Source of the DNA: Mobula hypostoma
Lineage: Eukaryota
Direction of reading: 5' to 3'
Length of the DNA stretch: 64,000 nucleotides
Assembly: GCF_963921235.1 (NCBI RefSeq)
Contig: NC_086121.1
Span: 44,144,001 to 44,208,000 of the forward strand
The notes under the pieces were generated by a model. That model worked only from the letters and a program-made list of their open reading frames with translations. It ran no database searches and was not told the origin of the DNA. Shown piece after piece: positions 11,246 to 64,000 of the stretch. Position 1 is the first letter of the stretch, and the number at the start of each line of letters is the position of its first letter. Position numbers and translations under genes: made by a program.

Positions 11246-11503
11246 TCTGTCTTTTGTCTACTGATGTTAACTTATGTTTGACTTGTTATCATGTCCTCCT
11301 GCTGCTGTTGATGCTGAAAAACAACATTTATATCATGTGTTCATATGTCGATGACAATAAACTTAAACTAGAAAAGATTGTATATTGCATACTGTATTAC
11401 TGCAGATGTAAATTTAATACAAATGTATTTTTCATTCATTTTACAGGATGCTTATATTTAATAGTTCATAACTGAGAATTTTCTTTTCCAGAGTTTGAAG
11501 AAA

Positions 11504-11521
11504 ATGGCTAAAGTATTTTTG
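11504..11521 (+). CDS. First coding exon of the mucin-like gene (exon 11492-11521), MAKVFL, start of signal peptide
   Basis: Acceptor ttttcttttccag, ATG in strong Kozak context (AAAATGG), perfect donor TG|gtaagt, phase 0. Joins in frame to 12867. Confidence 0.7.
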
Positions 11522-12866: not shown

Positions 12867-12900
12867 GCATTTCTAACTGTTATCATACACTGCATCACCA
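12867..12900 (+). CDS. Second coding exon, AFLTVIIHCIT(+1 nt), hydrophobic core of signal peptide
   Basis: Acceptor ctttgtttaatcccag, donor A|gtaagt, phase 0 to 1. Gives MAKVFLAFLTVIIHCIT, a typical signal peptide, with a phase compatible with all downstream phase-1 exons. Confidence 0.7.
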
Positions 12901-26624: not shown

Positions 26625-29278
26625 GCTTGTTATTTCTTCAAAGAATTCCAACAGGTTTGTCAGGCAAGATTTTCCCATGAGGAAACCACGTTGACTATGG
26701 TCTGTTTTATCATGTACCTGCAAGTACCTGCAGGTTGTGACTTAGGAGCCTGATTGAATTTTTTGAGGATGTAACTAAACACATTGATGAAGGAACAGCA
26801 GTAGATGTAGTGTATATGGATTTCAGCAAGGCATTTGATAAAGTACCCCATGCCAAGCTTGTTGAGAAAGTAAGGAGGCATGGGATCCAAGGGGACATTG
26901 CTTTGTGGATCCAGACTGGCTCACCCACGGAAGGCAAAGAGTGGTTATAGATGGGTCATATTCTGCATGGAGGTCGGTGACCAGTGTTGTGACTCAGGGC
27001 TCTGTTCTGGGACCCCTACTCTTTGTGATTTTTATAAATGACCTGGATGAGGAAGTGGCTGATGACACAAAGGTTGGGGTGTTGTGGATAGTCTGGAGGG
27101 CTGTCAAAGGTTACAATGGGACATCGATAGAATGCAAAACTGGGCTGAAAATTGGCAGATGGAGTTCAACCCAGATAAGTGTGAAGTGGTTCAGTTTGGT
27201 AGGTTAGATATGATGGCAGAATATAGTATTAATGGTAACACTCTTGGCAGTGTGGAAGATCAGAGGGATCTTGGGGTCCAAGTTCATAGGACACTCAAAG
27301 CTGCTACGCAGGTTGACTCTGTGGTTAAGAAGGCATACGGTACATTGGCCTTCATAAACAGTGGGATTAAGTTTAGGAGCTGAGAGGTAATGTTGCAGCT
27401 ATATAGGACCGTGGTCAGTCCCCACTTGGAGCACTGTGCTCAGTTCTGGTCGCTTCAATACAGGAAGAATGTGGAAACCATAGAAAAGGTGCAGAGGAGG
27501 TTTGCAATGCTATTGCCTGGGTTGGGGAGCATGCCTTCTGAGAATAGGTTGAGTAAACTCGGCCTTTTCTCCTTGAAGTGACAGAGGATGAGAGGTGTAT
27601 ATGATGATGAGAGGCATTGATCATGTGGATAGTCAGAGGCTGTTTCCCAGGTCTGAAATGGCTAGAACAAGAGGGCAGATTTTTAACGTACTTGGAAGCA
27701 GGTACAGAGGAGATGTCAGGGGTAAGTTTTTTACTCAGAGTGGTGAGTGCGTGGAATGGGCTGCCGGTGGCGGCGGTGGAGGCTGAGGAAATGATAGGGT
27801 CTTTTAGGAGACTCCTGGATAGGTACATGGAGTTTAGAAAAATAGAGGGCTGTGGGTAAGCCTAGGTAGTTCTAAGGTAAGGACATGATCGGCGCAGCTT
27901 TATCGGCCGAAAGGCCTGGATTGTGCTCTAGGTTTTCTACGTTTCTGTGTTTCTACCCTGAAACCATATCCTTAACAATTGACTCCAACATCTTCTCAAC
28001 CAATGAGTGCAGACTAACTGGTCTCTCATTTGCATTATTCTACCTCTCTTCCTTCTTGAAGAGTGGATCGACATTTGCAATTTTCTAGTCTTCCAGAATC
28101 TAATGATTCTTGAAAGATCAGTATTAAAACTTCCGCAATGTCTTCACCATCTCCTTCAGAACCCTTTGAGTGGATACCACCTGGTCCAGGTGACTTGTAT
28201 ACCTTCAAACCTTTCAGTTTCCCAAGAAGCTTCTCTGTAATATTGACAACTTCAGACACTTTCCTCCTGACACTCTCGAACATCCAGTATACTGCTGGTG
28301 TCTTCCACTGTGAAGACTGATGAACTTCATCCGCTGTTTCCTTGCACCCAATTACAACCTCTCCAGTGTCACTTTCCAGTGCTCCAATATCCACTCTCAC
28401 CTCTCTGTTACACTTTATGTACCTGAAGAAACTTTTCGTACCCTCTTTATTATTGGCTAGTATACTTTTGTATCATCTCATTCTTAATAGTTTTTTGATT
28501 TTGTGAAGAAACTCAATCAAGTTTGTAAGGAACAAATTGCCCTGAACAAAGCCGTGTTGGCTCTCCCAGTACACAACAGTACAAATAACAAATGTCCAGC
28601 TGCAATAATTCCCTTCAACTACTACCCCCAGTCTTTTATAAGCAAACTAGTTCTGAATTCAAGTGACCAATTTGCCACTGATCCCATACACCTTAATCTT
28701 CTCATAAGGAAGATTTTGAAATGCCTTGGTAAAATCCAGGTAGGCAACATCCACAGTTCTAGCTCCATCCATCACCTTTGTCAAAAAACTAATCAAGATT
28801 TGCCCATCCCATGCTGGCTCTCCTTAATTAGTACATGATTTTGTAAATACTCTTAAATTCTACCCCGAAGAATTCTCTCCAGTAACTTCCTTACCATTGA
28901 CATGAGACACACAGGTGTATCATTTCCAGGATTATCTCTTCTTCCCTCTGAATAATGCAACAACATTAGCTACCTGCCAGTCCTCTGGGATGTTGCCTGT
29001 GGCTAGAGATGATGCAAGCATATTGGTCAAGGCCCTAGCAGTCTCTTCTTTTGCCTCTCTCAATAAGCTGTTGTATATCCCATCAGGTCCCGGGGATTTG
29101 TTCATGTTAATTCTCTTTAAGAGACTCAACACTCTCTCCTGATTTATTTCAAAATGCAGTAGCATATCAGAATTTTCACCAATGAACTCCCTATACAAGT
29201 CATTCTCCTTTGTAACCACGGATATAAAGTACTCTGATGGACCTCACCCATGTCCTCCACATCCAAGCTAATATTTCC
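26625..29278 (-). mobile_element. Minus-strand CR1 fragments with a nested plus-strand CR1 (about 26735-27952)
   Basis: KSPGPGGIH, KSPGPDGIY...WQVANVVALF on minus; [28 protein letters not shown] on plus. Confidence 0.85.
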
Positions 29279-29283
29279 AACAG

Positions 29284-29381
29284 GTGTAATGTTGCTGTTG
29301 GATTCTATTGTGAGAACGACCAGCAAAGTGATCAGAGCTGCCAAGATTACAGAATACGATTCACCTGCCCTCCATCATTTT
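29284..29381 (+). pseudogene. Orphan second-half CysD/WxxW exon (CNVAVGFYCENDQQSDQSCQDYRIRFTCPPSF); partner first-half exon missing
   Basis: 98-nt paralog of 51330-51427 with the same aacag|G acceptor and T|gtaagt donor. It starts in phase 2, but I find no phase-2 donor exon upstream. A CR1 fragment abuts the acceptor. Confidence 0.75.
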
Positions 29382-29722: not shown

Positions 29723-29749
29723 GTGCTGTTCTTTCTACTCCAGATACAT
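29723..29749 (+). CDS. 27-nt symmetric microexon, (S/C)AVLSTPDT
   Basis: Same acceptor context as the downstream microexons (ttaactgaattgttttgtttctgcttttag), donor gtgagtatatc, phase 1-1. Confidence 0.75.
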
Positions 29750-30287
29750 GTGAGTATATCCTGTCCACTCTAAATAGGAAGATCTTTGACTAATGTTCAA
29801 CTGCAACTTCAAGCCTCATCTGGCTGTTTTAAGAGCTCCTTGATATGAATTTTATTGAATCGCGCTTCCAACCTCGTAAAATATGGCCATAAGACCTTTC
29901 CTTCTCAAACAATTCGATGCATTTAGATCACTAACCATTCCCTCATTCTGTGGGTTAGTCTGGCACTGGAATTGCAACAATCCAATTGGCGCCCATATTT
30001 TCCATTCATCTGTCACCAGTTCCAAATGGTCAACTTAGATTGACTGCTGTTTAAAAGCAACATCTAGTGACCTATGTATGACTATGTAGAACATGCTTCA
30101 TGCAGAATTATTTACTGATGTCCCTCTGGGTGGGACAGAATATGAAGAAAAAAGAAAACGCATTTAAGTTCCAAAGAGGTCAGGTAGCACCACACTCACA
30201 AACGGAGTTCAGTATTTATCAAAGCAACACACATCAAAGTTGCTGGTGAACGCAGCAGGCCAGGCAGCATCTCTAGGAAGAGGTACA

Positions 30288-51043: not shown

Positions 51044-51221
51044 CAAAAATATGCAAAACTGAATGGTTTAACATTGATGACCCATCAGGAGAGGGAGATT
51101 ATGAAGTTTTTAACCATCTGTATATTCAATTTCCCAACCGCATCTGCCTTTATCCAATCACCTGTGAGGTGGAGACAACATCAGGGGTTCCAGCCTCACA
51201 GACTGGAGAGAACATTGAACC
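51044..51221 (+). CDS. CysD/Mucin2_WxxW domain exon A (KICKTEWFNIDDPSGEGDYEVFNHLYIQFPNRICLYPITCEVETTSGVPASQTGENIE)
   Basis: Acceptor tttttttctcatcttcag, donor CC|gtacgt. The WF-x-x-D-D-P-S-G-x-G-D-Y-E and C-x-x-P motifs are characteristic of MUC2/MUC5/CILP CysD domains. Confidence 0.9.
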
Positions 51222-51329
51222 GTACGTAACAAAGCTGCTCATATTGTTTCACAAATATTACTTCATTCCAAAAAGCATTGAGAGCTTCTTCAATGACTCC
51301 ATTACATGTTCCTTCTCTGTGGTGAACAG

Positions 51330-51427
51330 GTGTAATGTTGCTCGTGGATTCTTCTGTAAGAACGACGATCAAAGTGATCAGATGTGCCAAGACTACAGAA
51401 TACGATTCACCTGCCCTCAATCACATT
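51330..51427 (+). CDS. CysD/Mucin2_WxxW domain exon B (CNVARGFFCKNDDQSDQMCQDYRIRFTCPQSH)
   Basis: aacag|G acceptor, T|gtaagt donor, phase 2 to 1. Motif G-x-x-C-x-N-x-x-Q...C-x-D-Y-x-I-R-F-x-C matches the CysD C-terminal half. Confidence 0.9.
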
Positions 51428-52443
51428 GTAAGTATGGGTAAATGCAAGTTATAGAGAGCTCAGAACATAAGTTTTAGAAAAAAATGTGGACCTCCAGGTG
51501 ATTTAATGTGGTCTGAGCTGATCAATCCCTCTGCCACCCTCTTACTATAGCTATCTATGCTCACTTCCATGTAACCATGTAAAGAGAATCTTTCAAGAGA
51601 AAAGACCTCCTTTATTACCTGCTCCAATGCCAAAGACAGCTGATCCATTTGGAGACCCAAACCGCCCACAACTTATTTCCCATGTGCATTACACATGCCA
51701 CTGACAGCTTTGTGGATACCATTTCACACCTATTGAAGGCAAAGGAGTGCAGATTGTACTTGTCACAGATAATGGCTGATGAGGCACATTGAAGTATTGA
51801 TGGAGAGATGATGTGTGAATAAAGGAGGAGATATTGTTAGAAGGAGATATAGCAAACATGGACAAGAATTTGGATGACAATGACAATTCTGATTCTGATA
51901 ATCCGCTGGTAATACGGAAAGCTGGAGCTCTATTGAGGACAGTGTGGACGACGGCATTTGCGAAGGGGTCAGGACCAGTTCTGGAGCTGAGGGGAAACAG
52001 ATCGTCACATCAGCCATCATGGAACACGAGGGGTAAAGTGAAGTGAGCAGCACATCAGTGATTCCGTAACACATTGGGATCTCATGTGCAAGTTGATGTC
52101 ATGCATTCTGATACAAAATATTGTTGCATGTCTACTGTGCTCAACTTAGACAGCAGATGAGTACCTCCAGAATGTGTATTCATTATTAATGTAATTCTTA
52201 TTTCCCATAATCAGTCAGTAGCTGCAAAACATGAATGGACCAATGGTGGTCATAGATTTCAGAACATAAGCTTTGGAAGAAGAAGGGTTGAACAGTCAGC
52301 TGATTTAATGTGTTCAGAACTGAATATTCACTCTCCCGCCTTCTTACCATAGCTATCATATCAGCTAGGTGATGATTGACGTATGTAAACTGTCACTACT
52401 TTTCAAATTTTAATTAACTGAATTGCTCTGTTTCTGCTTTTAG

Positions 52444-52467
52444 GTCCCACACCTGCAACAACTACAG
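52444..52467 (+). CDS. 24-nt microexon type A, (C)PTPATTT
   Basis: tttctgcttttag|GTCCCACACCTGCAACAACTACAG|gtgaga; phase 1-1. Confidence 0.85.
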
Positions 52468-53098
52468 GTGAGAATATTCTTCCTATTCTAATGGGATAAA
52501 CTTTGACTACTGTAAAAATGCTCCATGAATTCTCATCGTCTATGTTTTTAAGAGCTCATTGATTAAGGCTAGCTTGAAACACAGCAACAATCTTTCCATC
52601 TGAAACAATGAGGTACATTCAGAACCTCAACCAGTCCTTCATTCTCTGCGTCAGTCCGGCCAAGGAACTGCAGAAGTCCAGTGGACTCCCATGCTGTCCT
52701 ATTCCCGTATCTCAAGTTCCAAGTGGTTAACTTAGATTGCCTGCTGTTTAAAAGCAACATTGAACAACCTATGTGCTATCTTGCAAAATATGCTAACTGC
52801 AAACATATTTACAAAATACCCTGTATGAGCAATGGGATAGAATGAAGATGCTAACACATGTAAATTCCAAGGTAGTCATTTAGTCCAAAAATGTAGTCAC
52901 GCCAACCTTGAATACTCCTTATATTAGAATGATTTCAAAGCAAGAATGCACAACCTCCACTCCAGATTTGTGGTACCAGAGCTGACTGTTGAGCCTGTTG
53001 TGTGATGTGAGGACTCCTCCACAGGGTGATGGTTGATCTTTAAAATGTCAATACTTTTCAAATTATAATGTAATGAACTGTTTTCTTTCTGCTTTTAG

Positions 53099-53122
53099 GT
53101 GCAAGGTCCACTACAGCTCCCA
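53099..53122 (+). CDS. 24-nt microexon type B, (G)ARSTTAP
   Basis: ttctgcttttag|GTGCAAGGTCCACTACAGCTCCCA|gtgagt. Confidence 0.85.
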
Positions 53123-53807
53123 GTGAGTAAATCCTTGCCATTCTAAATATTGCAAACATTGACTCCAGTACAAAAGCTCCATCAAACAACATCGTGCCTG
53201 GTTTGAAGGCTGCTTGAGAGTAATAAACTTGCAACGTAGTTACAACAAAACGACAATATAGTCATGAGACATTTCCTTCTAAAGCAATTAGATGCATTGA
53301 AATCATCTCATTTCATTTGTCTTCATTATCTACATTAGTCTGGCAGATGAATCACAATTGTCTAGTGGCATCTCATGCTGTTGCCTTCACCTATCGCCAG
53401 GTCCAAGTGGTCAACTGAGATTTGACTGCTGCTTGATACGAACGTCACTGGACCTATGTGTTACCAGGTGCAACGTGCATTATGTAGACGTATCTACAGA
53501 AGTCCTTGAAAGAGGGACAGATAACAATTAATAGGTGAAAACATTGTAATACCAAAGAGGTCTGTTAGTTCAGGACACCAAGACTTAGCACTCTCAAAAC
53601 TGTATTCAGTAGGAATTGAACAGATGAAGTGCTCAACGTCATCCATCAACAAACTGTTAGAAATAACACTGAGAGTACACACATTGAGTCAACATGAAAA
53701 TAAAAGTTTTACGGTCTTAGATGTTATCAATTGTCTTTCATGAAGACCGGCTCATCTATTGTCCATTTTTAAAATGTCAATACTTTTCAAATTATAATGT
53801 AATGAAC

Positions 53808-54367
53808 TGCCCCATTCTGTTTTGCAGCTACTGACTGAAGATGCAAAGTAAGAATTACATTCAGACTTCTTGAGAGCTTGTTATGCTCCTTCTCTGCTTC
53901 ATTATCTGCAAGAGCGGATATAACAGACGTAAGCCTGAAAACTGACATGTCTTTAAAGGGAGTAATGGTGTTGTCTGCTCATCTCCATAGCTCATACTTC
54001 TAATAACGAAGACTGCAGCAACAACTGGACAATTATGAAGACTGGCTCAAAAAGATACAAATTTAATCTTCCCCAAACAAGTGTGACTAATGAGCAACAC
54101 GAAAAGCATCTAAGTGCAACATTCTTTAGCTAGACATATTTACAGAATTCCCTGTGAGGGTATGGGAAGTTTTTATATCATTGGAAGAAACAAATTCTTA
54201 ATTCAGTCAAAAAGCAAAAGCAAGTATACACAAGCACTTGGGAACTGAAGGCAGTTTGCGCTCTTGCAGATAATGAAGCAGAGAAGGAGCATAACAAGCT
54301 CTCAAGAAGTCTGAATGTAATTCTTACTTTGCATCTTCAGTCAGTAGCTGCAAAACAGAATGGGGCA
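53808..54367. repeat. 109-bp inverted repeat (53808-53916 / 54259-54367)
   Basis: tgccccattctgttttgcagctact...atctgcaagagcg is the reverse complement of cgctcttgcagat...aaacagaatggggca. Confidence 0.9.
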
Positions 54368-54978
54368 ATGCTGGTTATAGATTTAAGAACATAAGCCTGA
54401 AAAGAAAAGCGGGAGTCAGCTGGCCTAATGTCTTCAGAACCGATCAGTGACTCTCAGACCCTCTTACTATCGCTATCTATTCTCACTTCCATATTGTCCA
54501 AAAAACTAGTCAGTCCTGTCTTGAACACTCCTTATCATACCCTTCTTTTGGATTCAGAATGCCTGATACCCATACCAGTTTGTGGTGCCGTGGGGTCAGT
54601 TGAAGTCATTGTTGAATAGAAGACACTTCCACTCATTGCCCGGGGGATGATTGACAAACATAAACAGACTGTCAGCTGATTTAACGTCTTCAGAGTTGAT
54701 CATTCATTCTGCCACCATCTTGCTATAGTTATCAATGCTCATATCTATATTGTCCAAAATTCTTGTAACCGCTGTCTTGAATACTCCTTACTGTCCAAAT
54801 TCTTTGGGATTGAGAATGCCTTACACCTACTCCTGTTTTGTGGTGCCGTGGGTGACAATTGAACCCCTTGCGGAGAGAGAAGACTCTCCCACATTATGGC
54901 CGGGTGATGGTTGACATATATAAATAGATAATAACTTTCAAATTATAATTAACTGAACTTTTTTCTTTTTGCTTTAAG

Positions 54979-55002
54979 GTACTGCTTCTACCACAACTCC
55001 AG
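54979..55002 (+). CDS. 24-nt microexon type C, (S)TASTTTP
   Basis: tttttgctttaag|GTACTGCTTCTACCACAACTCCAG|gtgagt. Confidence 0.85.
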
Positions 55003-55626
55003 GTGAGTATATCCTTCCTATTCTAAAAGCGTAACTGTGACTGCAGTATAATGGCTCTGGCAAGCCTCATCGTTTGCATTTCAAGAGCTCCTTGATTATA
55101 ATTAATGTGAAACACAGCTACAGCTTTTTCTCCCGCAGCAATTGGATTCATTTAGATCATCAACCAGTCCGTTATTTTCTGGGTCGGTACAGAACAGGAA
55201 TTTCACGAGTCAAGTGGGCTCCGATGCCATTTCATTCCCCTTTCGCCAGTTCCAACTTTCTCTGACTGCTGTTTGAAAGCAATCTCTAGTGAACTATGTG
55301 CATCTGTGTACAACATGATTTATGCAGACATATTTACAAAACTCCCTGTGGGTGGGACAGGATAGAATGAGGTTGCAAATTCATTTATCTCCGAAGTGTT
55401 CATGTGGTCCAGGAATCCAGTCACCCCAACCTTAAGCAAGCCTTATTTGACCGTGCTTTTGCAGCAAGAATGTTTAACCTTCTCTCCCCGTTAGTGGGCC
55501 GAGGTAATTGCTGAACCTGCCGTGTGATGTGAGGACTCCACAGTTTAGCAGTATAATAGCTGACCTCTAATAAATGTCAATGGTTTTCAAATTATAATTA
55601 AATAAATTGTTTTTTTCTGCTTTCAG

Positions 55627-55650
55627 GTGCTAGTTCTACTGCGACTCCTA
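55627..55650 (+). CDS. 24-nt microexon type D, (G)ASSTATP
   Basis: tttctgctttcag|GTGCTAGTTCTACTGCGACTCCTA|gtgagt. Confidence 0.85.
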
Positions 55651-56823
55651 GTGAGTATATCTTTCAAATCCTAAGTATTGCAAATTATAACTGCCGTTCA
55701 AAAGCTCCATCGAATGGCATCGTGTCAAGCTTGAAGAATTTTTTGACCTTAATAATCTTGAAACAGAGAGTTGGTCTTTTTAGCAAACAATAATTGCTGC
55801 TTGTAATTGCCAGTCTTTGAGAACTTCCACGTTTCATTCAGAAGTAATATATTTAGGTCATTGCTCTGCTACGGGAAGTTAGGGAACTGTGTCTTGCTTC
55901 ATGATTGGAGTTTTCAGTGAACAAATTTTTTGTGGACAATGGTCGCAAATCGATCAGATTTAGCATTGTTTTGGTGACCGTCAATTTCAGGTGAAGACTG
56001 AAATCATGAGAAAGTGACACACAGGGGAAAAGCTAGGCACAGTAGCACAAGGAAACAGCTGAGGAGGGAAGATATGGAGAATCTGTTATTGGATTCACCC
56101 ACATCTGACATGTACGAGTCATTTGAATGCCAGCTGGTCAGAACTCAGAAACAAAATTTTCCTGTGAGGAACAAAGACAACTATGCAAAATTTTCATATC
56201 ATTAGGACACAAGAGTTCCAAATTCAGTAGAAAACAAAAAAAAGTATGCATTCTTTAATAGGACAATTGTGATACTGATGATAAGCTGATAATAATGAAA
56301 GCCGGAGGTTTATTGAGGAGAGGGTGTACAAAGCAGGTATGAAGGGGTCAGGATCAGTTCTGGAGTTGAAGGGATATTGTTCTTGTCAGTAGCCACCATT
56401 GGACAAGATGGGTTCGGGAAACTGAACAGCACATCAGAGATTGCCTAACACTTTGCGCTCTCATATGCAAGTTGATGTAATGCATTCTGATACCAAATAT
56501 ATTTCTGACTGTATATTCTGCTTGTATACACAGCAGATGAGTCCCATCAGGAAATGCATTTAATATTAATGTAATTCTGATTTCCCATAATCAGTCAGTA
56601 GCTGCAAAACATGAATGGGCCAATGGTGGTCATAGATTTCAGAACATAAGCCTTGGAAGAAGAAGGGTTGAACAGTCAGCTGATTTAATGTGTTCAGAAC
56701 CGAACATTCACTCTCCCGCCTTCTTACCATAGCTATCATATCAGCTGGGTGATGATTGATGTATCTAAACTGTCACCACTTTTCAAATTTTAATTAACTG
56801 AATTGCTCTGTTTCTGCTTTTAG

Positions 56824-56847
56824 GTCCCACACCTACAACAACTACAG
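56824..56847 (+). CDS. 24-nt microexon type A, (S)PTPTTTT
   Basis: tttctgcttttag|GTCCCACACCTACAACAACTACAG|gtgaga. Confidence 0.85.
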
Positions 56848-57488
56848 GTGAGAATATTCTTCCTATTCTAATGGGATAAACTTTGACTACTGTAAAAATG
56901 CTCCATGAGTCCTCATCATCTATGTTTTTAAGAGCTCATTGATTAAGGCTAGCTTGAAACACAGCAACAATATTTTCTTCTGAAACAATGAGATACATTC
57001 AGAACCTCAACCAGTCCTTCATTCTCTGCGTCAGTCCGGCCAAGGAACTGCAAAAGTCCAGTGGACTCCCATGCTGTCCTATTCCCGTATCTCAAGTTCC
57101 AAGTGGTTAACTTAGATTGTCTGCTGTTTAAAAGCAACATTGAGCAACCTATGTGCTATCTTGCAAAAAATATGCTAACTGCAAGCATACTTACAAAACA
57201 CCCCGTATGAGCAATGGGATAGAATGAACATTCTAACACGATTAAATTCTAAAGTAATCACTTAGTCCAAAAAAGTTGTCACACAAACCTTGAATAATCC
57301 TTATATTAGAATGATTTCAAAGAAAGAATGCACAACCTCCACTCCAGATTTGTGGTACCAGAGTTGACTATTAAGCCTGTTGTGTGATTTGAGGACTCCT
57401 CCACAGCCTGGCAGGGTAATGGTTGATCTTTAAACTGTCAATATTTTTCAAATTTTAATGTAATGAACTATTTTCTTTCTGCTTTTAG

Positions 57489-57512
57489 GTGCAAGTTCCA
57501 CTACAGCTCCCA
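57489..57512 (+). CDS. 24-nt microexon type B, (G)ASSTTAP
   Basis: ttctgcttttag|GTGCAAGTTCCACTACAGCTCCCA|gtgagt. Confidence 0.85.
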
Positions 57513-59203
57513 GTGAGTATATCCTTCCCATTCTAAATATTGCAAACTTTGACTACAGTACAAAAGTTCCATCAAGCAACATCGTGTCTAGTTTGAAGGG
57601 CTGCTTCATAAATTTGCAACACAATTAGAATGCAACAGCAGCATTTTCACGGGACATTTCCTTCTGAAGCAATTAGATGCATTGAAATCATTTCATTTAA
57701 TTTGTCCTTCATTATCTACATTAGTCTGGCAGAGGAATCACAATTGTCTAGTGGCATCTCATGCTGTTGCCTTCAGCTATCGCCAGGTCCAAGTGGTCAA
57801 CTGAGATTTGACTGCTGCTTGATACGAAGATCACTGGACCTATGTGCTACCAGGTGCAACGTGCGTTATGTAGACGTATCTACAGAAGTCCCTGAGAGAG
57901 GGACAGATAACAATTAATATGTGAAGACAGTATAATTCCAAAGAGGTCTGTTAGTTCAGGGCACCAAGACTTACCACTCTCAAAATTGTATTCGGAAGGA
58001 ATTGGACAGATGAACTGCTCAATGTCATCCATCAACAAACTGTTATAAATAGCACTGAGAGGAGACATGTTGAGTAAACATGAAAATAAAAGTTTTACGG
58101 ATTTAGATGTTATCAATGGTCTTTCATGAACACCGGCTCATCTATTGTCCACTGGTCTCAAACAAAACTGACTCGACTTTAAAGAGAGTAATGGTGTTGT
58201 CTGCTCATCTCCATTGCTCATACTTCTAATAACGAAGACTGCAGCAACAACTGGACAATTATGAAGACTGGATCAAAAAGATGCAAATTTAATCTTCCCC
58301 AAACAAGGGTGACTAAAGAGCAACACAATAAGCATCCAAGTGCAACATTCTTTAGCTAGAGATTTCTACAGAGATCACTGTGAGAGTATGGGAAGTTTTT
58401 ATATCGTTGGAAGAAACAAGTTCTTAATTCAGTCAAAATGCAAAAGCATGTCTACACAAGCACTTACCAACTTAAGGCGGTTTGCGCTCTTGCAGGAAAT
58501 GAAGCAGCGAAGGAGCATAATAAGCTATCAAGAGGTCTGAAGTCATTCTTACTTGGCATCTTCAGTCAGCAGCTGCAAATCAGAATGGGGCAATGCTGGT
58601 TATAGATTTCAGAACATAGCCTGAAAAGAAAAGCTGGATGTCAGCTGCTTTAATATCTTCAGAACCGATCAGTGACTCTCAGACCCTCTTACTATAGCTA
58701 TCTATTCTCACTTCCATATTGTCCAAAAAACTAGTCAGTACTGTCTTGAACACTCCTTATCATACCCTTCTTTTGGATTCAGAATGCCTGATACCCACAC
58801 CGGTTTTGTGGTGCTCTGGTGTCAGTTGAAGTCCTTGTCAAATAGAAGACTCTTCCATTTATTGGCCGGGGGATGATTGATAAATATAAATAGACTGTCA
58901 GCTGATTTAATGTTTTCAGAGCTGATCACACAGTCTGACACCTTCTTCCTTTAGGTATTAATTCTCACTTCTGAACTGTCCAAAATTCTTGTAACCGCTG
59001 TCTTGAACACTCCTTACTGTCCAATTCTTTGGGATTGAGAATGCCTTACACCTACTCCTGTTTTGTGGTGGCGCGGGTGACAATTGAAGCATTTGTGGAG
59101 AGAGAAGACTCTCCCACATTATGGTCGGTGATGATTGACATATATAAACAGATAATAATTTCCAAATTATAATTAACTGAACTTTTTTTCTTTTTGCTTT
59201 AAG

Positions 59204-59227
59204 GTACTGCGTCTACTACAACTCCAG
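59204..59227 (+). CDS. 24-nt microexon type C, (S)TASTTTP
   Basis: tttttgctttaag|GTACTGCGTCTACTACAACTCCAG|gtgagt; differs from 54979 only at synonymous positions. Confidence 0.85.
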
Positions 59228-59851
59228 GTGAGTATATCCTTCCTATTCTAAAAGCGTAACTGTGACTGCAGTAAAAAGGCTCTGTCAAGCCCCATTGTTT
59301 GTATTTCAAGATCTCCTTGATGACAATTAATGTGAAACACAGCTCCATCTTTTCCTCCTGCAATAATTGGATGCATTTAGATCATCAACCAGTCCGTAAT
59401 TTTCTGGGTCAGTACAGAGCAGGAATTTCATGAGTCAAGTGGGCTCCGATGCCATTTAATCCCCCTTTCGCCAGTTCCAAGTGGTTAACTTTCACTGACT
59501 GCTGTTTGAAAGCAATGTCTAGTGAACTATGTGCATCCTTGTCGAACAGTCTTTATGCAGACATATTTACAAAATTCCCTGTGGGTGGGACGGGATAGAA
59601 TGAGGTTACAAATTCATTTATCTCCGAAGTGTTCATGTGGTCCAGGAATCCAGTCACCCCAACCTTAAGCAAGCCTTATTTGACCGTGCTTTTGCAGCAA
59701 GAATGTTTAAACTTCTCTCCCGATTAGTGACCCGAGGCAAATGCTGAACCTGCCATGTGATGTGAGGACTACACAATGTAAAAGCTGACCTTTAATAACT
59801 GTCAATGGTTTTCAAATTATAGCTAAATAAATTGTTTGTTTCTGCTTTCAG

Positions 59852-59875
59852 GTGCTGGTTCTACTGCAACTCCTA
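59852..59875 (+). CDS. 24-nt microexon type D, (G)AGSTATP
   Basis: tttctgctttcag|GTGCTGGTTCTACTGCAACTCCTA|gtgagt. Confidence 0.85.
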
Positions 59876-61095
59876 GTGAGTATATCTTTCAAATCTTAAA
59901 CATTGCAAATTTTAACTGCAGTTCAAAGCTCTATCGGACGATATTGTGTCTAGCTTGAAGGGTTTTTTGACTTTAATAATCTTGAAGCAGAGAGTTGGTC
60001 TTCTTAGCAAACAATAATTGCTGCATATATTTGCCAGTCTTTGAGAACTCCCAGGTTTCATTCAGAAGTGATATATTTAGGTCATTGCTGTACTAGGGGA
60101 AGTTAGGGAACTGTGTCTTGCCTTGTGATTGGATTTTTCAATGAACAAATTTTTTGTGGACAGTGGTTGAAAATCGATCAGATTTAGCATTGTTTTGGTA
60201 ACGATCAGTTTCAGGTGAAGACTGAAATCATGAGAGAGTGAAACAAAGGGGAAAAGCTAGGCACAGTAGCACAAGGAAACAGCTGAGGAGGGAAGATATG
60301 GAGAATCTGTTGCTGGGTTCATCCATATCCGACATGTACGAGTCACTTGAAGCCAAGCTGGTCAGAACTCAGGAACAAAATTTTCCTGTGAGGAACAAAG
60401 AAAACTATGCAAAATTTTCATATCATTGGGACACAGGAGTTCCAAATTCAGTAGAAAGCAAAAAAAATGTATGCGTTCTTTTAGAGGACAATTGTGAAAC
60501 TGATGATAAGCCGATAATAATGAAAGCTGGAGGTTGATTGAGGAGAGGGTGTACGAAGCACATGTGAAGGGGTCAGGATCAGTTCTGGAGTTGAGGGAAT
60601 ATTGTTCTTGTCAGTAGCCAGCATTGGACAAGATGGGTTCGGGAAACTGAACAGCACATCAGAGATTGCCTAACACATTGCGCTCTCATATGCAAGTTGA
60701 TGTAATGCATTCTGATGCCAATCTATTTCTGCATGTATATTCTGCCTATATAGACGGCAGATGAGTACAATCAGAAAATGCACTTAATATTAACGTAATT
60801 CCTGTTATCCTCAATACTGAATGGGGCAATGGTGATTATTGATTTCAGAACATGTCTGAAGAGAAAAGTTGTACTGTCAGCTGATTTAATGTCTTCAGCG
60901 TTGATCAATCACTCTGCCACTCTCTTACTACAGAATGCCTTACACACACTCCTGTTTTGTGGTGCCGTGGGTGACAATTGAAGCCCTTGTGGAGAGAGAA
61001 GATGCCCACATTATGGCCGGGTGATGATTGACATATATAAACAGATAATAATTTTCAAATTATAATTAACTGAACATTTTTCTTTTTGCTTTAAG

Positions 61096-61119
61096 GTACT
61101 GCTTCTACTACAACTCCAG
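61096..61119 (+). CDS. 24-nt microexon type C, (S)TASTTTP
   Basis: tttttgctttaag|GTACTGCTTCTACTACAACTCCAG|gtgagt. Confidence 0.85.
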
Positions 61120-61743
61120 GTGAGTATATCATTCCTAATCTAAAAGCATAACTGTGACTGCAGTAAAAAGGCTCTGTCAAGCCTTATCATTTATATTTCA
61201 AGCGCTCCTTAATTTTCAACAATGTGAAACACAGCTACAACTTTTCCTCCTGCAACAATTGGATGCATTAAGATCATCAACCAGTCTGTTATTTTCTGGG
61301 TCGGTACAGAACAGGAATTTCACCAGTCAAGTGGGTTCCGATGCCATTTCATTCCCCTTTCGCCAGTTCCAAGTGGTTAACTTTCACTGACTGCTGTTTG
61401 AAAGCAATGTCTAGTGAACTATGTGCATCCTTGTCGAACAGTCTTTATGCAGACATATTTACAAAATTCCCTGTGGGTGGGACGGGATAGAATGAGGTTG
61501 CAAATTCATTTATCTCCGAAGTGTTCATGTGGTCCAGGAATCCAGTCACCCCAACCTTAAGCAAGCCTTATTTGACCGTGCTTTTGCAGCAAGAATGTTT
61601 AAACTTCTCTCCCGATTAGTGACCCGAGGCAAATGCTGAACCTGCCATGTGATGTGAGGACTACACAATGTAAAAGCTGACCTTTAATAACTGTCAATGG
61701 TTTTCAAATTATAGCTAAATAAATTGTTTGTTTCTGCTTTCAG

Positions 61744-61767
61744 GTGCTGGTTCTACTGCAACTCCTA
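61744..61767 (+). CDS. 24-nt microexon type D, (G)AGSTATP
   Basis: tttctgctttcag|GTGCTGGTTCTACTGCAACTCCTA|gtgagt. Confidence 0.85.
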
Positions 61768-62987
61768 GTGAGTATATCTTTCAAATCTTAAACATTGCAA
61801 ATTTTAACTGCAGTTCAAAGCTCTATCGGACGATATTGTGTCTAGCTTGAAGGGTTTTTTGACTTTAATAATCTTGAAGCAGAGAGTTGGTCTTCTTAGC
61901 AAACAATAATTGCTGCATATATTTGCCAGTCTTTGAGAACTCCCAGGTTTCATTCAGAAGTGATATATTTAGGTCATTGCTGTACTAGGGGAAGTTAGGG
62001 AACTGTGTCTTGCCTTGTGATTGGATTTTTCAATGAACAAATTTTTTGTGGACAGTGGTTGAAAATCGATCAGATTTAGCATTGTTTTGGTAACGATCAG
62101 TTTCAGGTGAAGACTGAAATCATGAGAGAGTGAAACAAAGGGGAAAAGCTAGGCACAGTAGCACAAGGAAACAGCTGAGGAGGGAAGATATGGAGAATCT
62201 GTTGCTGGGTTCATCCATATCCGACATGTACGAGTCACTTGAAGCCAAGCTGGTCAGAACTCAGGAACAAAATTTTCCTGTGAGGAACAAAGAAAACTAT
62301 GCAAAATTTTCATATCATTGGGACACAGGAGTTCCAAATTCAGTAGAAAGCAAAAAAAATGTATGCGTTCTTTTAGAGGACAATTGTGAAACTGATGATA
62401 AGCCGATAATAATGAAAGCTGGAGGTTGATTGAGGAGAGGGTGTACGAAGCACATGTGAAGGGGTCAGGATCAGTTCTGGAGTTGAGGGAATATTGTTCT
62501 TGTCAGTAGCCAGCATTGGACAAGATGGGTTCGGGAAACTGAACAGCACATCAGAGATTGCCTAACACATTGCGCTCTCATATGCAAGTTGATGTAATGC
62601 ATTCTGATGCCAATCTATTTCTGCATGTATATTCTGCCTATATAGACGGCAGATGAGTACAATCAGAAAATGCACTTAATATTAACGTAATTCCTGTTAT
62701 CCTCAATACTGAATGGGGCAATGGTGATTATTGATTTCAGAACATGTCTGAAGAGAAAAGTTGTACTGTCAGCTGATTTAATGTCTTCAGCGTTGATCAA
62801 TCACTCTGCCACTCTCTTACTACAGAATGCCTTACACACACTCCTGTTTTGTGGTGCCGTGGGTGACAATTGAAGCCCTTGTGGAGAGAGAAGATGCCCA
62901 CATTATGGCCGGGTGATGATTGACATATATAAACAGATAATAATTTTCAAATTATAATTAACTGAACATTTTTCTTTTTGCTTTAAG

Positions 62988-63011
62988 GTACTGCTTCTAC
63001 TACAACTCCAG
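62988..63011 (+). CDS. 24-nt microexon type C, (S)TASTTTP
   Basis: Copy of 61096-61119, exactly 1892 bp downstream. Confidence 0.85.
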
Positions 63012-63635
63012 GTGAGTATATCATTCCTAATCTAAAAGCATAACTGTGACTGCAGTAAAAAGGCTCTGTCAAGCCTTATCATTTATATTTCAAGCGCTCC
63101 TTAATTTTCAACAATGTGAAACACAGCTACAACTTTTCCTCCTGCAACAATTGGATGCATTAAGATCATCAACCAGTCTGTTATTTTCTGGGTCGGTACA
63201 GAACAGGAATTTCACCAGTCAAGTGGGTTCCGATGCCATTTCATTCCCCTTTCGCCAGTTCCAAGTGGTTAACTTTCACTGACTGCTGTTTGAAAGCAAT
63301 GTCTAGTGAACTATGTGCATCCTTGTCGAACAGTCTTTATGCAGACATATTTACAAAATTCCCTGTGGGTGGGACGGGATAGAATGAGGTTGCAAATTCA
63401 TTTATCTCCGAAGTGTTCATGTGGTCCAGGAATCCAGTCACCCCAACCTTAAGCAAGCCTTATTTGACCGTGCTTTTGCAGCAAGAATGTTTAAACTTCT
63501 CTCCCGATTAGTGACCCGAGGCAAATGCTGAACCTGCCATGTGATGTGAGGACTACACAATGTAAAAGCTGACCTTTAATAACTGTCAATGGTTTTCAAA
63601 TTATAGCTAAATAAATTGTTTGTTTCTGCTTTCAG

Positions 63636-63659
63636 GTGCTGGTTCTACTGCAACTCCTA
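63636..63659 (+). CDS. 24-nt microexon type D, (G)AGSTATP
   Basis: Copy of 61744-61767, exactly 1892 bp downstream. Confidence 0.85.
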
Positions 63660-64000
63660 GTGAGTATATCTTTCAAATCTTAAACATTGCAAATTTTAAC
63701 TGCAGTTCAAAGCTCTATCGGACGATATTGTGTCTAGCTTGAAGGGTTTTTTGACTTTAATAATCTTGAAGCAGAGAGTTGGTCTTCTTAGCAAACAATA
63801 ATTGCTGCATATATTTGCCAGTCTTTGAGAACTCCCAGGTTTCATTCAGAAGTGATATATTTAGGTCATTGCTGTACTAGGGGAAGTTAGGGAACTGTGT
63901 CTTGCCTTGTGATTGGATTTTTCAATGAACAAATTTTTTGTGGACAGTGGTTGAAAATCGATCAGATTTAGCATTGTTTTGGTAACGATCAGTTTCAGGT

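What the first reader, a model, noticed from the sequence alone, without database searches (positions are those of the whole stretch)
52444..63659. Mucin PTS domain built from an array of 24-nt symmetric microexons, one octapeptide per exon
Seen: twelve 24-nt exons, all phase 1-1, each with a pyrimidine-tract acceptor and a GTGAG(T/A) donor, spaced 0.65-1.9 kb apart. They splice to PTPATTT-GARSTTAP-STASTTTP-GASSTATP-SPTPTTTT-GASSTTAP-STASTTTP-GAGSTATP-... with no indels or stops, while the flanking introns carry indels. Type C copies differ only at synonymous sites. Established: human MUC2/MUC5AC/MUC5B encode PTS repeats in one giant exon, and the MUC5AC unit is also an octapeptide (TTSTTSAP). 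Repeat-per-exon designs are known from Xenopus FIM integumentary mucins and Schistosoma SmPoMuc/MEG genes. Inference: any subset of exons can be skipped in frame, giving a combinatorial, length-variable O-glycosylated mucin. Gene predictors would probably miss it.
Basis: partly seen in the sequence, partly recalled or inferred. Interest (0 to 1): 0.92.

Follow-up and report, generated by a model that had tools for sequence, protein, structure and literature searches.

The report
Devil-ray mucin domain made of microexons
A secreted CysD-domain glycoprotein gene of the devil ray Mobula hypostoma builds its sugar-carrying mucin stretch from a long tandem array of 24-base exons, one eight-residue repeat per exon; this is a rare gene design that automatic annotation has only partly captured.

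Summary
Twelve 24-nt, phase 1-1 exons lie at the stated coordinates (ABCD ABCD CD CD). Each has a pyrimidine-tract acceptor and a GTGAG(T/A) donor.

They follow a two-exon CysD/WxxW domain (51044-51427) that ends in phase 1, so the Pro/Thr/Ser frame is the one the gene dictates. The window is Mobula hypostoma. It then loses the frame at an alternative donor.

Homologous exon arrays with the same flanks occur in the stingray Hemitrygon akajei. In the skate Leucoraja erinacea they appear as single 21-nt linkers between CysD modules. Introns keep fossils of deleted CysD exons, so the array grew from CysD-plus-linker units.

The gene is not a VWD gel-forming mucin. It belongs to the signal-peptide-plus-CysD family of the zebrafish lateral-line cupula mucin (si:dkey-205h13.2), which was described as lacking PTS.

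Repeat-per-exon mucin domains are known (chicken Muc13, SmPoMuc). I class this as a new variant of a known kind. Transcript support per junction and combinatorial skipping remain untested.

The earlier scan notes I found concern this same stretch, not other DNA.

The parts
11492..11521 (+). Exon carrying the likely start codon (ATG at 11504) and the first six signal-peptide residues (MAKVFL). The donor is GTAAGT.
   Evidence: tblastn of P0018 against the window; sequence read.
12867..12900 (+). Second signal-peptide exon (AFLTVIIHCIT), ending in phase 1.
   Evidence: 100% tblastn match to P0018 and P0002; sequence read.
29283..29381 (+). Orphan second exon of a first CysD copy. Its splice sites are intact but its partner first exon is absent from the window. 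The Mobula RefSeq models skip it.
   Evidence: tblastn at 81% to CysD exon 2; sequence; no exon-1 homologue elsewhere in the window; absent from P0018 and P0162.
29725..29751 (+). 27-nt phase 1-1 linker microexon Z (AVLSTPDT). It is homologous to the 24-nt exons, flanks included.
   Evidence: Sequence; alignment A1; present in P0018, P0002 and P0162 as S-AVLSTPDT-S.
51044..51221 (+). CysD/WxxW domain, first exon (phase 1 to phase 2).
   Evidence: Pfam PF13330, E=2.8e-08 for this exon alone.
51330..51427 (+). CysD/WxxW domain, second exon. It ends in phase 1 with a T that needs GT from the next exon to make the last conserved Cys.
   Evidence: Pfam PF13330, E=7.2e-08; sequence; P0018 reads ...QSHC-PTPATTT.
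52444..52467 (+). Microexon A1 (PTPATTT).
   Evidence: in P0018.
53099..53122 (+). Microexon B1 (ARSTTAP).
   Evidence: in P0018.
54979..55002 (+). Microexon C1 (TASTTTP).
   Evidence: in P0018.
55627..55650 (+). Microexon D1 (ASSTATP).
   Evidence: in P0018.
56824..56847 (+). Microexon A2 (PTPTTTT).
   Evidence: in P0018.
57489..57512 (+). Microexon B2 (ASSTTAP).
   Evidence: in P0018.
59204..59227 (+). Microexon C2 (TASTTTP). The RefSeq model uses an alternative donor 29 nt downstream (exon runs to 59256), which shifts the frame.
59852..59875 (+). Microexon D2 (AGSTATP).
61096..61119 (+). Microexon C3 (TASTTTP).
61744..61767 (+). Microexon D3 (AGSTATP).
62988..63011 (+). Microexon C4 (TASTTTP).
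63636..63659 (+). Microexon D4 (AGSTATP). The array runs on past the end of the window.
   Evidence: the gene range of P0018 is 194.5 kb; further exons in L002.
52195..52258 (+). Fossil of a deleted CysD module in the intron before A1. The acceptor and a frameshifted CKTEW start remain, flanked by homologues of the CysD up- and downstream introns. Paralogous fossils lie near 56575-56638, 54330-54370 and 58560-58600.
   Evidence: blastn; pattern search; alignment A2.
52401..52445 (+). About 45 nt of acceptor-flank element (putative branch point, pyrimidine tract, AG) that recurs before every microexon. It is 82-92% identical to the skate linker-exon flank, while the rest of the intron is unalignable.
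   Evidence: Alignment A1; skate-versus-window blastn.

Best explanation
The twelve 24-mers are real coding microexons of one very large gene of Mobula hypostoma. RefSeq covers it as LOC134337692 and, probably, the next two LOCs.

What the gene encodes: a secreted protein made of a signal peptide, a 27-nt linker exon, a two-exon CysD/WxxW domain, and then a long Thr/Ser/Pro/Ala-rich stretch. That stretch is assembled from phase 1-1 microexons, one octapeptide each, and ends in another CysD.

How the frame is set: every module boundary is in phase 1. The CysD second exon ends with T, and every microexon begins with GT. The junction codon is therefore TGT (the last CysD cysteine), GGT or AGT, depending only on the last base of the upstream exon.

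How the array arose (inferred): the ancestral tandem unit was CysD plus a linker microexon, as skates still have it. In the stingray and devil-ray lineage the CysD exons were deleted from most units, leaving fossils in the introns. The remaining exon-plus-intron units of about 0.65-1.9 kb were then amplified in blocks (ABCD of 4.4 kb, CD of 1.9 kb).

What the product does (inferred): it is an O-glycosylated mucin-like polymer whose CysD domains provide cross-linking. By family membership it most likely contributes to a sensory or epithelial gel such as the lateral-line cupula.

Shown versus inferred: the anatomy, frames, homology and the existence of the RefSeq models are shown. Splicing of every exon, glycosylation, tissue and function are inferred.
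For: Anatomy in the window:
- Twelve exons with uniform strong splice signals. The strict pattern gives 8 matches against 0.15 expected.
- The upstream CysD is confirmed by Pfam. Its phase-1 end fixes the PTS frame.

Predicted proteins:
- P0018 (XP_062888954.1, M. hypostoma) matches the window exon by exon. It reads ...QSHC-PTPATTT-G-ARSTTAP-S-TASTTTP-G-ASSTATP-S-PTPTTTT-G-ASSTTAP-S-TASTTTP.
- M. birostris XP_072101263.1 links the signal peptide, CysD, microexon chain and terminal CysD in one model.
- M. hypostoma XP_062888956.1 shows the chain entering the terminal CysD in the same frame.

Other species:
- The H. akajei locus L001 holds at least 29 homologous 24-nt exons with the same acceptor and donor context, including 16 identical CD units of 1983 bp.
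- The skate locus L003 has a 21-nt linker exon with the homologous flank in every ~1.96-kb CysD unit.

Coding signature:
- Exon lengths of 21, 24 and 27 nt all differ by multiples of 3.
- Codon position 2 is C in 87% of codons and is the least variable position (diversity 0.18, against 0.38 and 0.33 at positions 1 and 3) across 18 distinct exon sequences.
- The acceptor flank is 82-92% identical between skate and devil ray, while the rest of the intron no longer aligns.

Origin and family:
- Fossil CysD starts sit in the introns.
- The signal-peptide-plus-CysD-only family is described in PMC11765562.
Against: - No transcript reads could be examined, and the evidence behind the Gnomon models is not visible with these tools.
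- The same models go out of frame after the seventh microexon through an alternative donor. In M. hypostoma they also split the locus into several genes, so they are imperfect witnesses.
- Exons are not more conserved than introns. Between the ABCD paralogues exons differ at 6.3% and introns at 9.9%. Between Mobula and Hemitrygon overall identity is about 85%, the C exon is 96-100% identical and the D exon 83-88%.
- Half of the paralogue differences in the exons are non-synonymous.
- Openness of the PTS frame is partly a by-product of composition: a second frame is also open.
- My search of the 5.8-billion-protein collection found no transcript-derived protein with the chain apart from RefSeq models.
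Confidence: 0.8

Rival explanations
1. The array is used combinatorially. Regulated skipping of individual 24-nt exons gives a ladder of mucin-domain lengths and sequences within one animal.
For: - All exons are phase 1-1 and all begin with GT, so every subset is in frame and junctions can only be Gly, Ser or Cys.
- The RefSeq models contain fewer exons than the genome. P0018 jumps from C2 to C-type and D-type exons without the intervening D exons.
- The M. birostris model lacks counterparts of A1 and D1.
- The same idea was raised for chicken Muc13 (PMC1552070).
- The pyrimidine tracts carry UCUU and UGC motifs of the kind bound by microexon regulators. This point rests on my own knowledge and was not tested.
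Against: - Splice sites are uniformly strong and nearly identical from exon to exon, which suits constitutive inclusion.
- Missing exons in the models can equally come from ambiguous read mapping among near-identical repeats (CD3 and CD4 are identical) or from genuine genomic differences between species.
- No isoform data were available.
Confidence: 0.25
2. The microexons are decaying pseudo-exons. The real transcript ends soon after the CysD, as in the models that stop with ...GEYILPIL intron read-through. On this reading the chains in RefSeq are prediction artefacts that spread from one species to another by protein alignment.
For: - Several models end by reading into the intron after a microexon: P0002, P0010 and P0163.
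- There is no excess exon conservation.
- One CysD copy in the window is already broken.
Against: - All 12 exons here, 13 more in L002 and at least 29 in H. akajei keep AG, GT, length and frame.
- The chain re-enters a terminal CysD exon in the correct phase.
- Length changes between lineages are multiples of three.
- The C at codon position 2 is constrained.
- The acceptor flank is conserved between skate and ray while the surrounding intron has diverged beyond alignment.
Confidence: 0.1
3. The exons are real but are read in the other frame seen in the RefSeq tails (YCFYYNSR / CWFYCNS). That would give a Tyr/Cys-rich repeat rather than a mucin domain.
For: The M. hypostoma and M. birostris models both switch to this frame through the donor 29 nt downstream of a C-type exon.
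Against: - In M. hypostoma this frame meets five stops within the twelve exons of this window: a TAG at four D-to-next-exon junctions, plus one inside D1. It also meets stops in L002.
- It needs a compensating odd exon to re-enter the terminal CysD.
- The phases of the CysD exons at both ends dictate the PTS frame.
Confidence: 0.03

Closest known systems
Fish 'Mucin-5AC' / si:dkey-205h13.2, the zebrafish lateral-line cupula mucin and its cartilaginous-fish homologues (PMC11765562)
   Same: - A signal peptide is followed directly by tandem CysD/WxxW domains.
- PF13330 is the only Pfam domain, with no VWD, VWC or CK.
- NCBI names the shark homologue (55% identical in the CysD) si:dkey-205h13.2.
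- The two-exon CysD module with phase 1 / 2 / 1 is shared with shark and skate genes.
   Different: - That family was described as having no PTS between the CysD domains.
- Here one to many linker microexons sit between CysDs, and in devil ray and stingray they form long PTS arrays.
- Orthology as opposed to paralogy was not resolved, and expression is unknown.
Chicken and zebrafish Muc13 PTS domain encoded by multiple exons (Lang et al. 2006, PMC1552070)
   Same: One repeat unit of the mucin domain per exon. The authors already proposed that splicing could set the length of the mucin domain.
   Different: - Muc13 is a transmembrane SEA/EGF mucin.
- Its repeat is 20 residues (about 60 nt) with at least 12 exons.
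- Here the unit is 8 residues (24 nt), the protein is a secreted CysD protein, and the array appears to run for 100-200 kb.
Schistosoma mansoni SmPoMuc (Roger et al. 2008, PMC2576457)
   Same: Tandem genomic repeats of about 1 kb, each holding one 27-bp exon that encodes a 9-residue mucin repeat, with up to about 20 units per gene. This is almost the same architecture.
   Different: It is a flatworm gene family with no CysD, so the resemblance is clearly convergent. Its polymorphism is generated by recombination, trans-splicing and aberrant splicing in a host-parasite context.
Gel-forming mucins MUC2 / MUC5AC / MUC5B
   Same: CysD domains are interspersed with Thr/Ser/Pro-rich O-glycosylation sequence.
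   Different: In those genes the PTS and CysD lie in one giant central exon (PMC1552070, PMC6269512) and are flanked by VWD assemblies and a CK domain. None of these features is present here.

Membership tests
VWD-type gel-forming mucins (MUC2/5AC/5B/6/19) | N-terminal VWD-C8-TIL assemblies and C-terminal VWC/CK domains | tested here: not met
   P0018, P0002 and P0162 start with a signal peptide followed directly by CysD. Pfam finds only PF13330. The M. birostris model ends in a CysD. No VWD-like ORF was seen in the window.
VWD-type gel-forming mucins (MUC2/5AC/5B/6/19) | PTS and CysD encoded in one large central exon | tested here: not met
   The CysD is split into two exons and the PTS into 24-nt exons.
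Signal-peptide + CysD-only secreted proteins (fish Mucin-5AC / si:dkey-205h13.2) | Signal peptide followed directly by CysD/WxxW domains, with no other domain type | tested here: met
   MAKVFLAFLTVIIHCIT-S-AVLSTPDT-S-KICKTEW.... PF13330 is the only domain. The signal peptide was judged by inspection only.
Signal-peptide + CysD-only secreted proteins (fish Mucin-5AC / si:dkey-205h13.2) | CysD domains abut without PTS sequence (as described in PMC11765562) | tested here: not met
   At least 96 residues of PTS follow the CysD in the window. P0002 has 24-residue PTS linkers between seven CysDs. Shark homologues do abut.
Signal-peptide + CysD-only secreted proteins (fish Mucin-5AC / si:dkey-205h13.2) | Expression in neuromast support cells and a role in the cupula | not testable with these tools
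   No expression data for Mobula were available. The zebrafish data are in PMC11765562.
Repeat-per-exon mucin domains (Muc13 of chicken/zebrafish; SmPoMuc) | Each exon encodes one repeat unit, and exon plus intron form a tandem genomic repeat | tested here: met
   Thirteen homologous exon-plus-flank units (alignment A1). Higher-order repeats of 4380 and 1892 bp.
Repeat-per-exon mucin domains (Muc13 of chicken/zebrafish; SmPoMuc) | Transcripts that contain the chained exons | tested here: inconclusive
   RefSeq Gnomon models in three species contain the chains, but their RNA evidence cannot be inspected. I found no independent transcript-derived protein.
Microexon genes in the schistosome sense (MEGs) | Most of the coding sequence lies in symmetric exons of 36 nt or less, with variation through exon skipping | tested here: inconclusive
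   Symmetric 21-27-nt exons are shown. The CysD exons are of normal size, skipping was not tested, and there is no sequence relationship.

The most novel reading that the evidence does not exclude
In stingrays and devil rays a whole mucin domain was invented from an inter-domain linker microexon. CysD exons were deleted from CysD-plus-linker units, and the leftover 24-nt exon units were amplified to perhaps a hundred or more copies across 100-200 kb. The cell could then set the length and composition of an O-glycosylated sensory-gel (cupula or ampullary) or skin mucin by regulated microexon inclusion, rather than by allele length.
Probability: 0.25. Interest if true: 0.8.

Novelty: new variant of a known kind. 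Interest (0 to 1): 0.6.

Why it matters
- Mucin domains are textbook single-giant-exon sequences. Here is a vertebrate counter-example at the extreme: 8 residues per exon, each followed by about 1 kb of intron. Its origin can be traced from skate (one linker exon per CysD), through fossil CysD exons, to ray arrays.
- It adds a PTS-bearing branch to a protein family that has just been tied to the lateral-line cupula.
- It gives a natural system for asking how the spliceosome handles long runs of near-identical microexons.
- It shows concretely where current annotation fails: frame loss, one gene split into three LOCs, and models ending in intron read-through.
- If inclusion is regulated, mucin length could be tuned by splicing.

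Tried and rejected
- Tandem Repeats Finder saw nothing, because its longest period is 500.
- Testing for purifying selection by exon-versus-intron identity, both within the window and against Hemitrygon, was uninformative. Introns are about 85-90% identical and the exons are too short.
- Frame openness is a poor discriminator. C at codon position 2 automatically keeps a second frame open.
- I looked for further PTS microexons or VWD exons in 1-50 kb of the window. I found only the 27-nt exon Z and an orphan CysD exon among LINE fragments.
- A search of the 5.8-billion-protein collection with the spliced product returned only RefSeq models and one genomic Logan contig, and no transcript-derived chain.
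- DNA for the rest of the M. hypostoma gene, the M. birostris gene and the zebra-shark (Stegostoma tigrinum, P0001) gene could not be fetched because the gene ranges exceed 100 kb. The tongue-sole protein was not on record.
- Literature searches for vertebrate mucin microexons and for ampullary-gel proteomes gave no description of this gene.
- I rejected the MUC2/MUC5AC assignment and the Tyr/Cys-rich alternative frame, for the reasons given under the rival explanations and the membership test.

Full report
**1. Checking the observation**

A mechanical scan for AG + 24 nt + GTRAG finds twelve Thr/Ser/Pro-coding hits on the + strand between 52444 and 63659 and none anywhere else in the 64 kb.

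- Their starts are 52444, 53099, 54979, 55627, 56824, 57489, 59204, 59852, 61096, 61744, 62988 and 63636.
- Each begins with GT, ends in G or A, follows a pyrimidine tract (TTTCTGCTTT[T/C/A]AG) and is followed by GTGAGT or GTGAGA.
- The stricter pattern YAG-GT-N22-GTGAGW gives 8 hits against 0.15 expected from shuffles. The four C-type exons use an AAG acceptor and so fall outside that pattern.
- Read in phase 1, the chain is PTPATTT-G-ARSTTAP-S-TASTTTP-G-ASSTATP-S-PTPTTTT-G-ASSTTAP-S-TASTTTP-G-AGSTATP-S-(TASTTTP-G-AGSTATP) twice more. It is 57% Ser+Thr and 15% Pro.
- The order is ABCD ABCD CD CD, with repeat periods of 4380 and 1892 bp.

**2. What surrounds the exons**

Just upstream lies a CysD/WxxW domain (Pfam PF13330) split into two exons, 51044-51221 and 51330-51427. 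The second exon ends with a single T in phase 1. The GT that opens the next exon completes TGT, the last conserved cysteine of the domain. This fixes the reading frame of the microexons as the PTS frame. It also explains why every microexon starts with GT: the junction codon is TGT, GGT or AGT according to the last base of the upstream exon.

Further upstream I found:

- A homologous 27-nt phase 1-1 exon at 29725-29751 (AVLSTPDT).
- An orphan second exon of another CysD copy at 29283-29381.
- Two signal-peptide exons at 11492-11521 and 12867-12900. The latter also ends in phase 1.

Most of the rest of 1-50 kb consists of LINE-like reverse-transcriptase fragments.

**3. Outside evidence**

A HMMER search with the CysD reading frame returned two near-identical proteins.

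- P0018 is XP_062888954.1, 'uncharacterized protein LOC134337692' of Mobula hypostoma. Mapped back, it matches the window exon by exon. It contains MAKVFLAFLTVIIHCIT-S-AVLSTPDT-S-[CysD]-C-PTPATTT-G-ARSTTAP-S-TASTTTP-G-ASSTATP-S-PTPTTTT-G-ASSTTAP-S-TASTTTP.
- After C2 the model uses a donor 29 nt further on (…G-EYILPILKA). The remaining exons are then read out of frame (YCFYYNSR, CWFYCNS) until a TAG. I regard that tail as unreliable. In this frame the twelve exons contain five stops.
- Other models tell the same story. XP_062888950.1 ('mucin-2-like', same chromosome) is seven repeats of CysD plus three microexons.
- XP_062888956.1 (LOC134337694, two genes downstream) shows a chain of seven microexons entering a terminal CysD in phase.
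- M. birostris XP_072101263.1 joins the signal peptide, CysD, microexon chain and that terminal CysD in one 100-kb gene.
- The M. hypostoma model spans 194.5 kb, and the 10 kb before LOC134337694 is still microexon array. The array therefore continues far beyond the window, and the three M. hypostoma LOCs are probably one gene. This last point is inference.

**4. Other species**

- *Stingray.* The red stingray Hemitrygon akajei has an orthologous model (P0010) that ends …C-TASTTTP-G-ASSTVTP-S-TTSITTP. Its locus L001 holds at least 29 homologous 24-nt exons with the same flanks, including 16 identical CD units of 1983 bp.
- *Skate.* In Leucoraja erinacea each ~1.96-kb unit consists of the two CysD exons plus one 21-nt linker exon (GVTEPP) with the same GTGAGTAT donor. 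Between skate and devil ray the introns no longer align. The exception is about 45 nt upstream of the microexon, which is 82-92% identical for the A, C, D and Z types alike.
- *Shark.* In Hemiscyllium ocellatum the CysD modules have the same phase 1 / 2 / 1 structure but abut directly, T|GC supplying the cysteine, with no linker exon.

**5. Is there a coding signature?**

Simple conservation tests are uninformative.

- The ABCD paralogues differ at 9.9% in introns and 6 of 96 positions in exons, with 19 intron indels.
- Mobula and Hemitrygon CD units are about 85% identical throughout.

Three other features are informative.

- Exon lengths in different lineages are 21, 24 and 27 nt, always differing by multiples of three.
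- Across 18 distinct exon sequences, codon position 2 is C in 87% of codons and is the least variable position. This is the pattern expected if Ser/Thr/Pro/Ala (NCN) is what selection keeps. These sequences share descent, so this evidence is supportive rather than decisive.
- Every one of more than 50 copies examined keeps both splice sites and the frame.

**6. Origin**

The introns before A1, A2, C1 and C2 contain a recognisable acceptor plus a TGCAAAAC(A)(T)GAATGG 'CKTEW' start of a CysD first exon. This is flanked by homologues of the introns on either side of the intact CysD, and about 400 bp in between is deleted. Homologues of the CysD flanks also lie in the D-to-C introns.

The ancestral unit was therefore CysD plus linker exon(s). 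Loss of CysD from units, followed by block amplification, produced the array. The most recent step is very recent: CD3 and CD4 are identical over 1013 nt and CD2 differs by 1.7%. This confirms two earlier scan notes on the same stretch (fossil CKTEW starts; the GT rule), both of which I re-tested here.

**7. What it is and how it works**

The protein is a signal peptide followed by CysD domains and PTS, with no VWD, VWC or CK domains. It is therefore not a MUC2/MUC5AC-type gel-forming mucin.

It belongs with the signal-peptide-plus-tandem-CysD proteins. NCBI names the shark members si:dkey-205h13.2. The zebrafish member is a neuromast support-cell product needed for normal cupula length (PMC11765562). 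That paper describes the fish family as lacking PTS; the ray genes are an exception.

My best reading, at confidence 0.8, is a secreted, heavily O-glycosylated CysD-cross-linked polymer whose mucin domain is spliced together from microexons. The tissue (cupula, ampullary gel, skin) and orthology to the cupula mucin are open.

Combinatorial skipping is permitted by the design and hinted at by models that contain fewer exons than the genome. Mapping ambiguity among identical repeats explains that equally well, so I give it 0.25.

**8. Novelty**

Repeat-per-exon mucin domains have been described.

- Chicken and zebrafish Muc13 has a 20-residue repeat per exon. The authors proposed that splicing could control mucin-domain length (PMC1552070).
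- SmPoMuc has a 27-bp exon in each ~1-kb tandem unit (PMC2576457).

The exons here are also partly present in RefSeq. I found no description of a microexon-built PTS in a CysD protein, nor of its derivation from linker exons. I therefore class it as a new variant of a known kind, of moderate-to-high interest for mucin biology, microexon splicing and annotation practice.

Noticed in passing
window 29283-29381 (and 26700-29220): There is an orphan second exon of a first CysD copy with intact acceptor and donor. No matching first exon exists in the window. LINE-like reverse-transcriptase sequence fills the space upstream to within about 60 nt. The exon needs a phase-2 partner, so including it after the phase-1 signal exon would shift the frame; the Mobula models skip it. 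In H. akajei this first CysD is complete (P0010).
   Followed up: partly
window 53808-53916 and 54259-54367: A perfect 109-nt inverted repeat (100% complementary, 342 nt apart) lies in the B1-to-C1 intron and is absent from the paralogous B2-to-C2 intron. The left arm abuts a duplicated B-type acceptor flank (about 53760-53810) that has no exon. This is either a very recent inverted duplication or an assembly artefact.
   Followed up: partly
window 59228-59256: An alternative donor (AAAGC|GTAACT) lies 29 nt downstream of C-type exons. RefSeq models of both Mobula species use it, which shifts the frame. It may be real unproductive splicing or a modelling artefact.
   Followed up: no
window 61096-64000: The CD3 and CD4 units are identical over the 1013 nt available, and CD2 differs from CD3 by only 1.7% with no indels. 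This points to very recent unit duplication or gene conversion, or to uncertain copy number in the assembly.
   Followed up: partly
L001 (Hemitrygon akajei) 60000-89766 and 110800-118763: There are sixteen identical ARSTEPP exons at an exact 1983-bp period, each paired with a TASTTTP exon. A second run of ARSTETP exons has a 1985-bp period. A block of four microexons is duplicated at about 50.4 kb and about 101 kb. The arrays are homogenised within species but differ between species.
   Followed up: partly
window, about 7-9 nt upstream of each microexon AG (e.g. 52434-52436): An invariant TGC sits inside the pyrimidine tract (TTTCTGCTTT) in all 13 Mobula copies. The skate flank has CTCC there instead. 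From memory, the position resembles UGC enhancers of SRRM4-type microexons. This was not tested.
   Followed up: no
window 55990-56500, 60220-60720, 62110-62610 (also 51560-52120): The D-to-A and D-to-C introns share a roughly 500-bp insert with a 103-codon open frame. The same insert is present in the Hemitrygon unit, so it is probably an old transposon fragment that was amplified along with the unit.
   Followed up: no
L002 (M. hypostoma OY992618.1, 44248346-44280684): RefSeq splits what is one gene in M. birostris into LOC134337692, a 232-residue gene and LOC134337694 in M. hypostoma. Thirteen further in-frame 24-nt exons lead into a divergent terminal CysD.
   Followed up: partly
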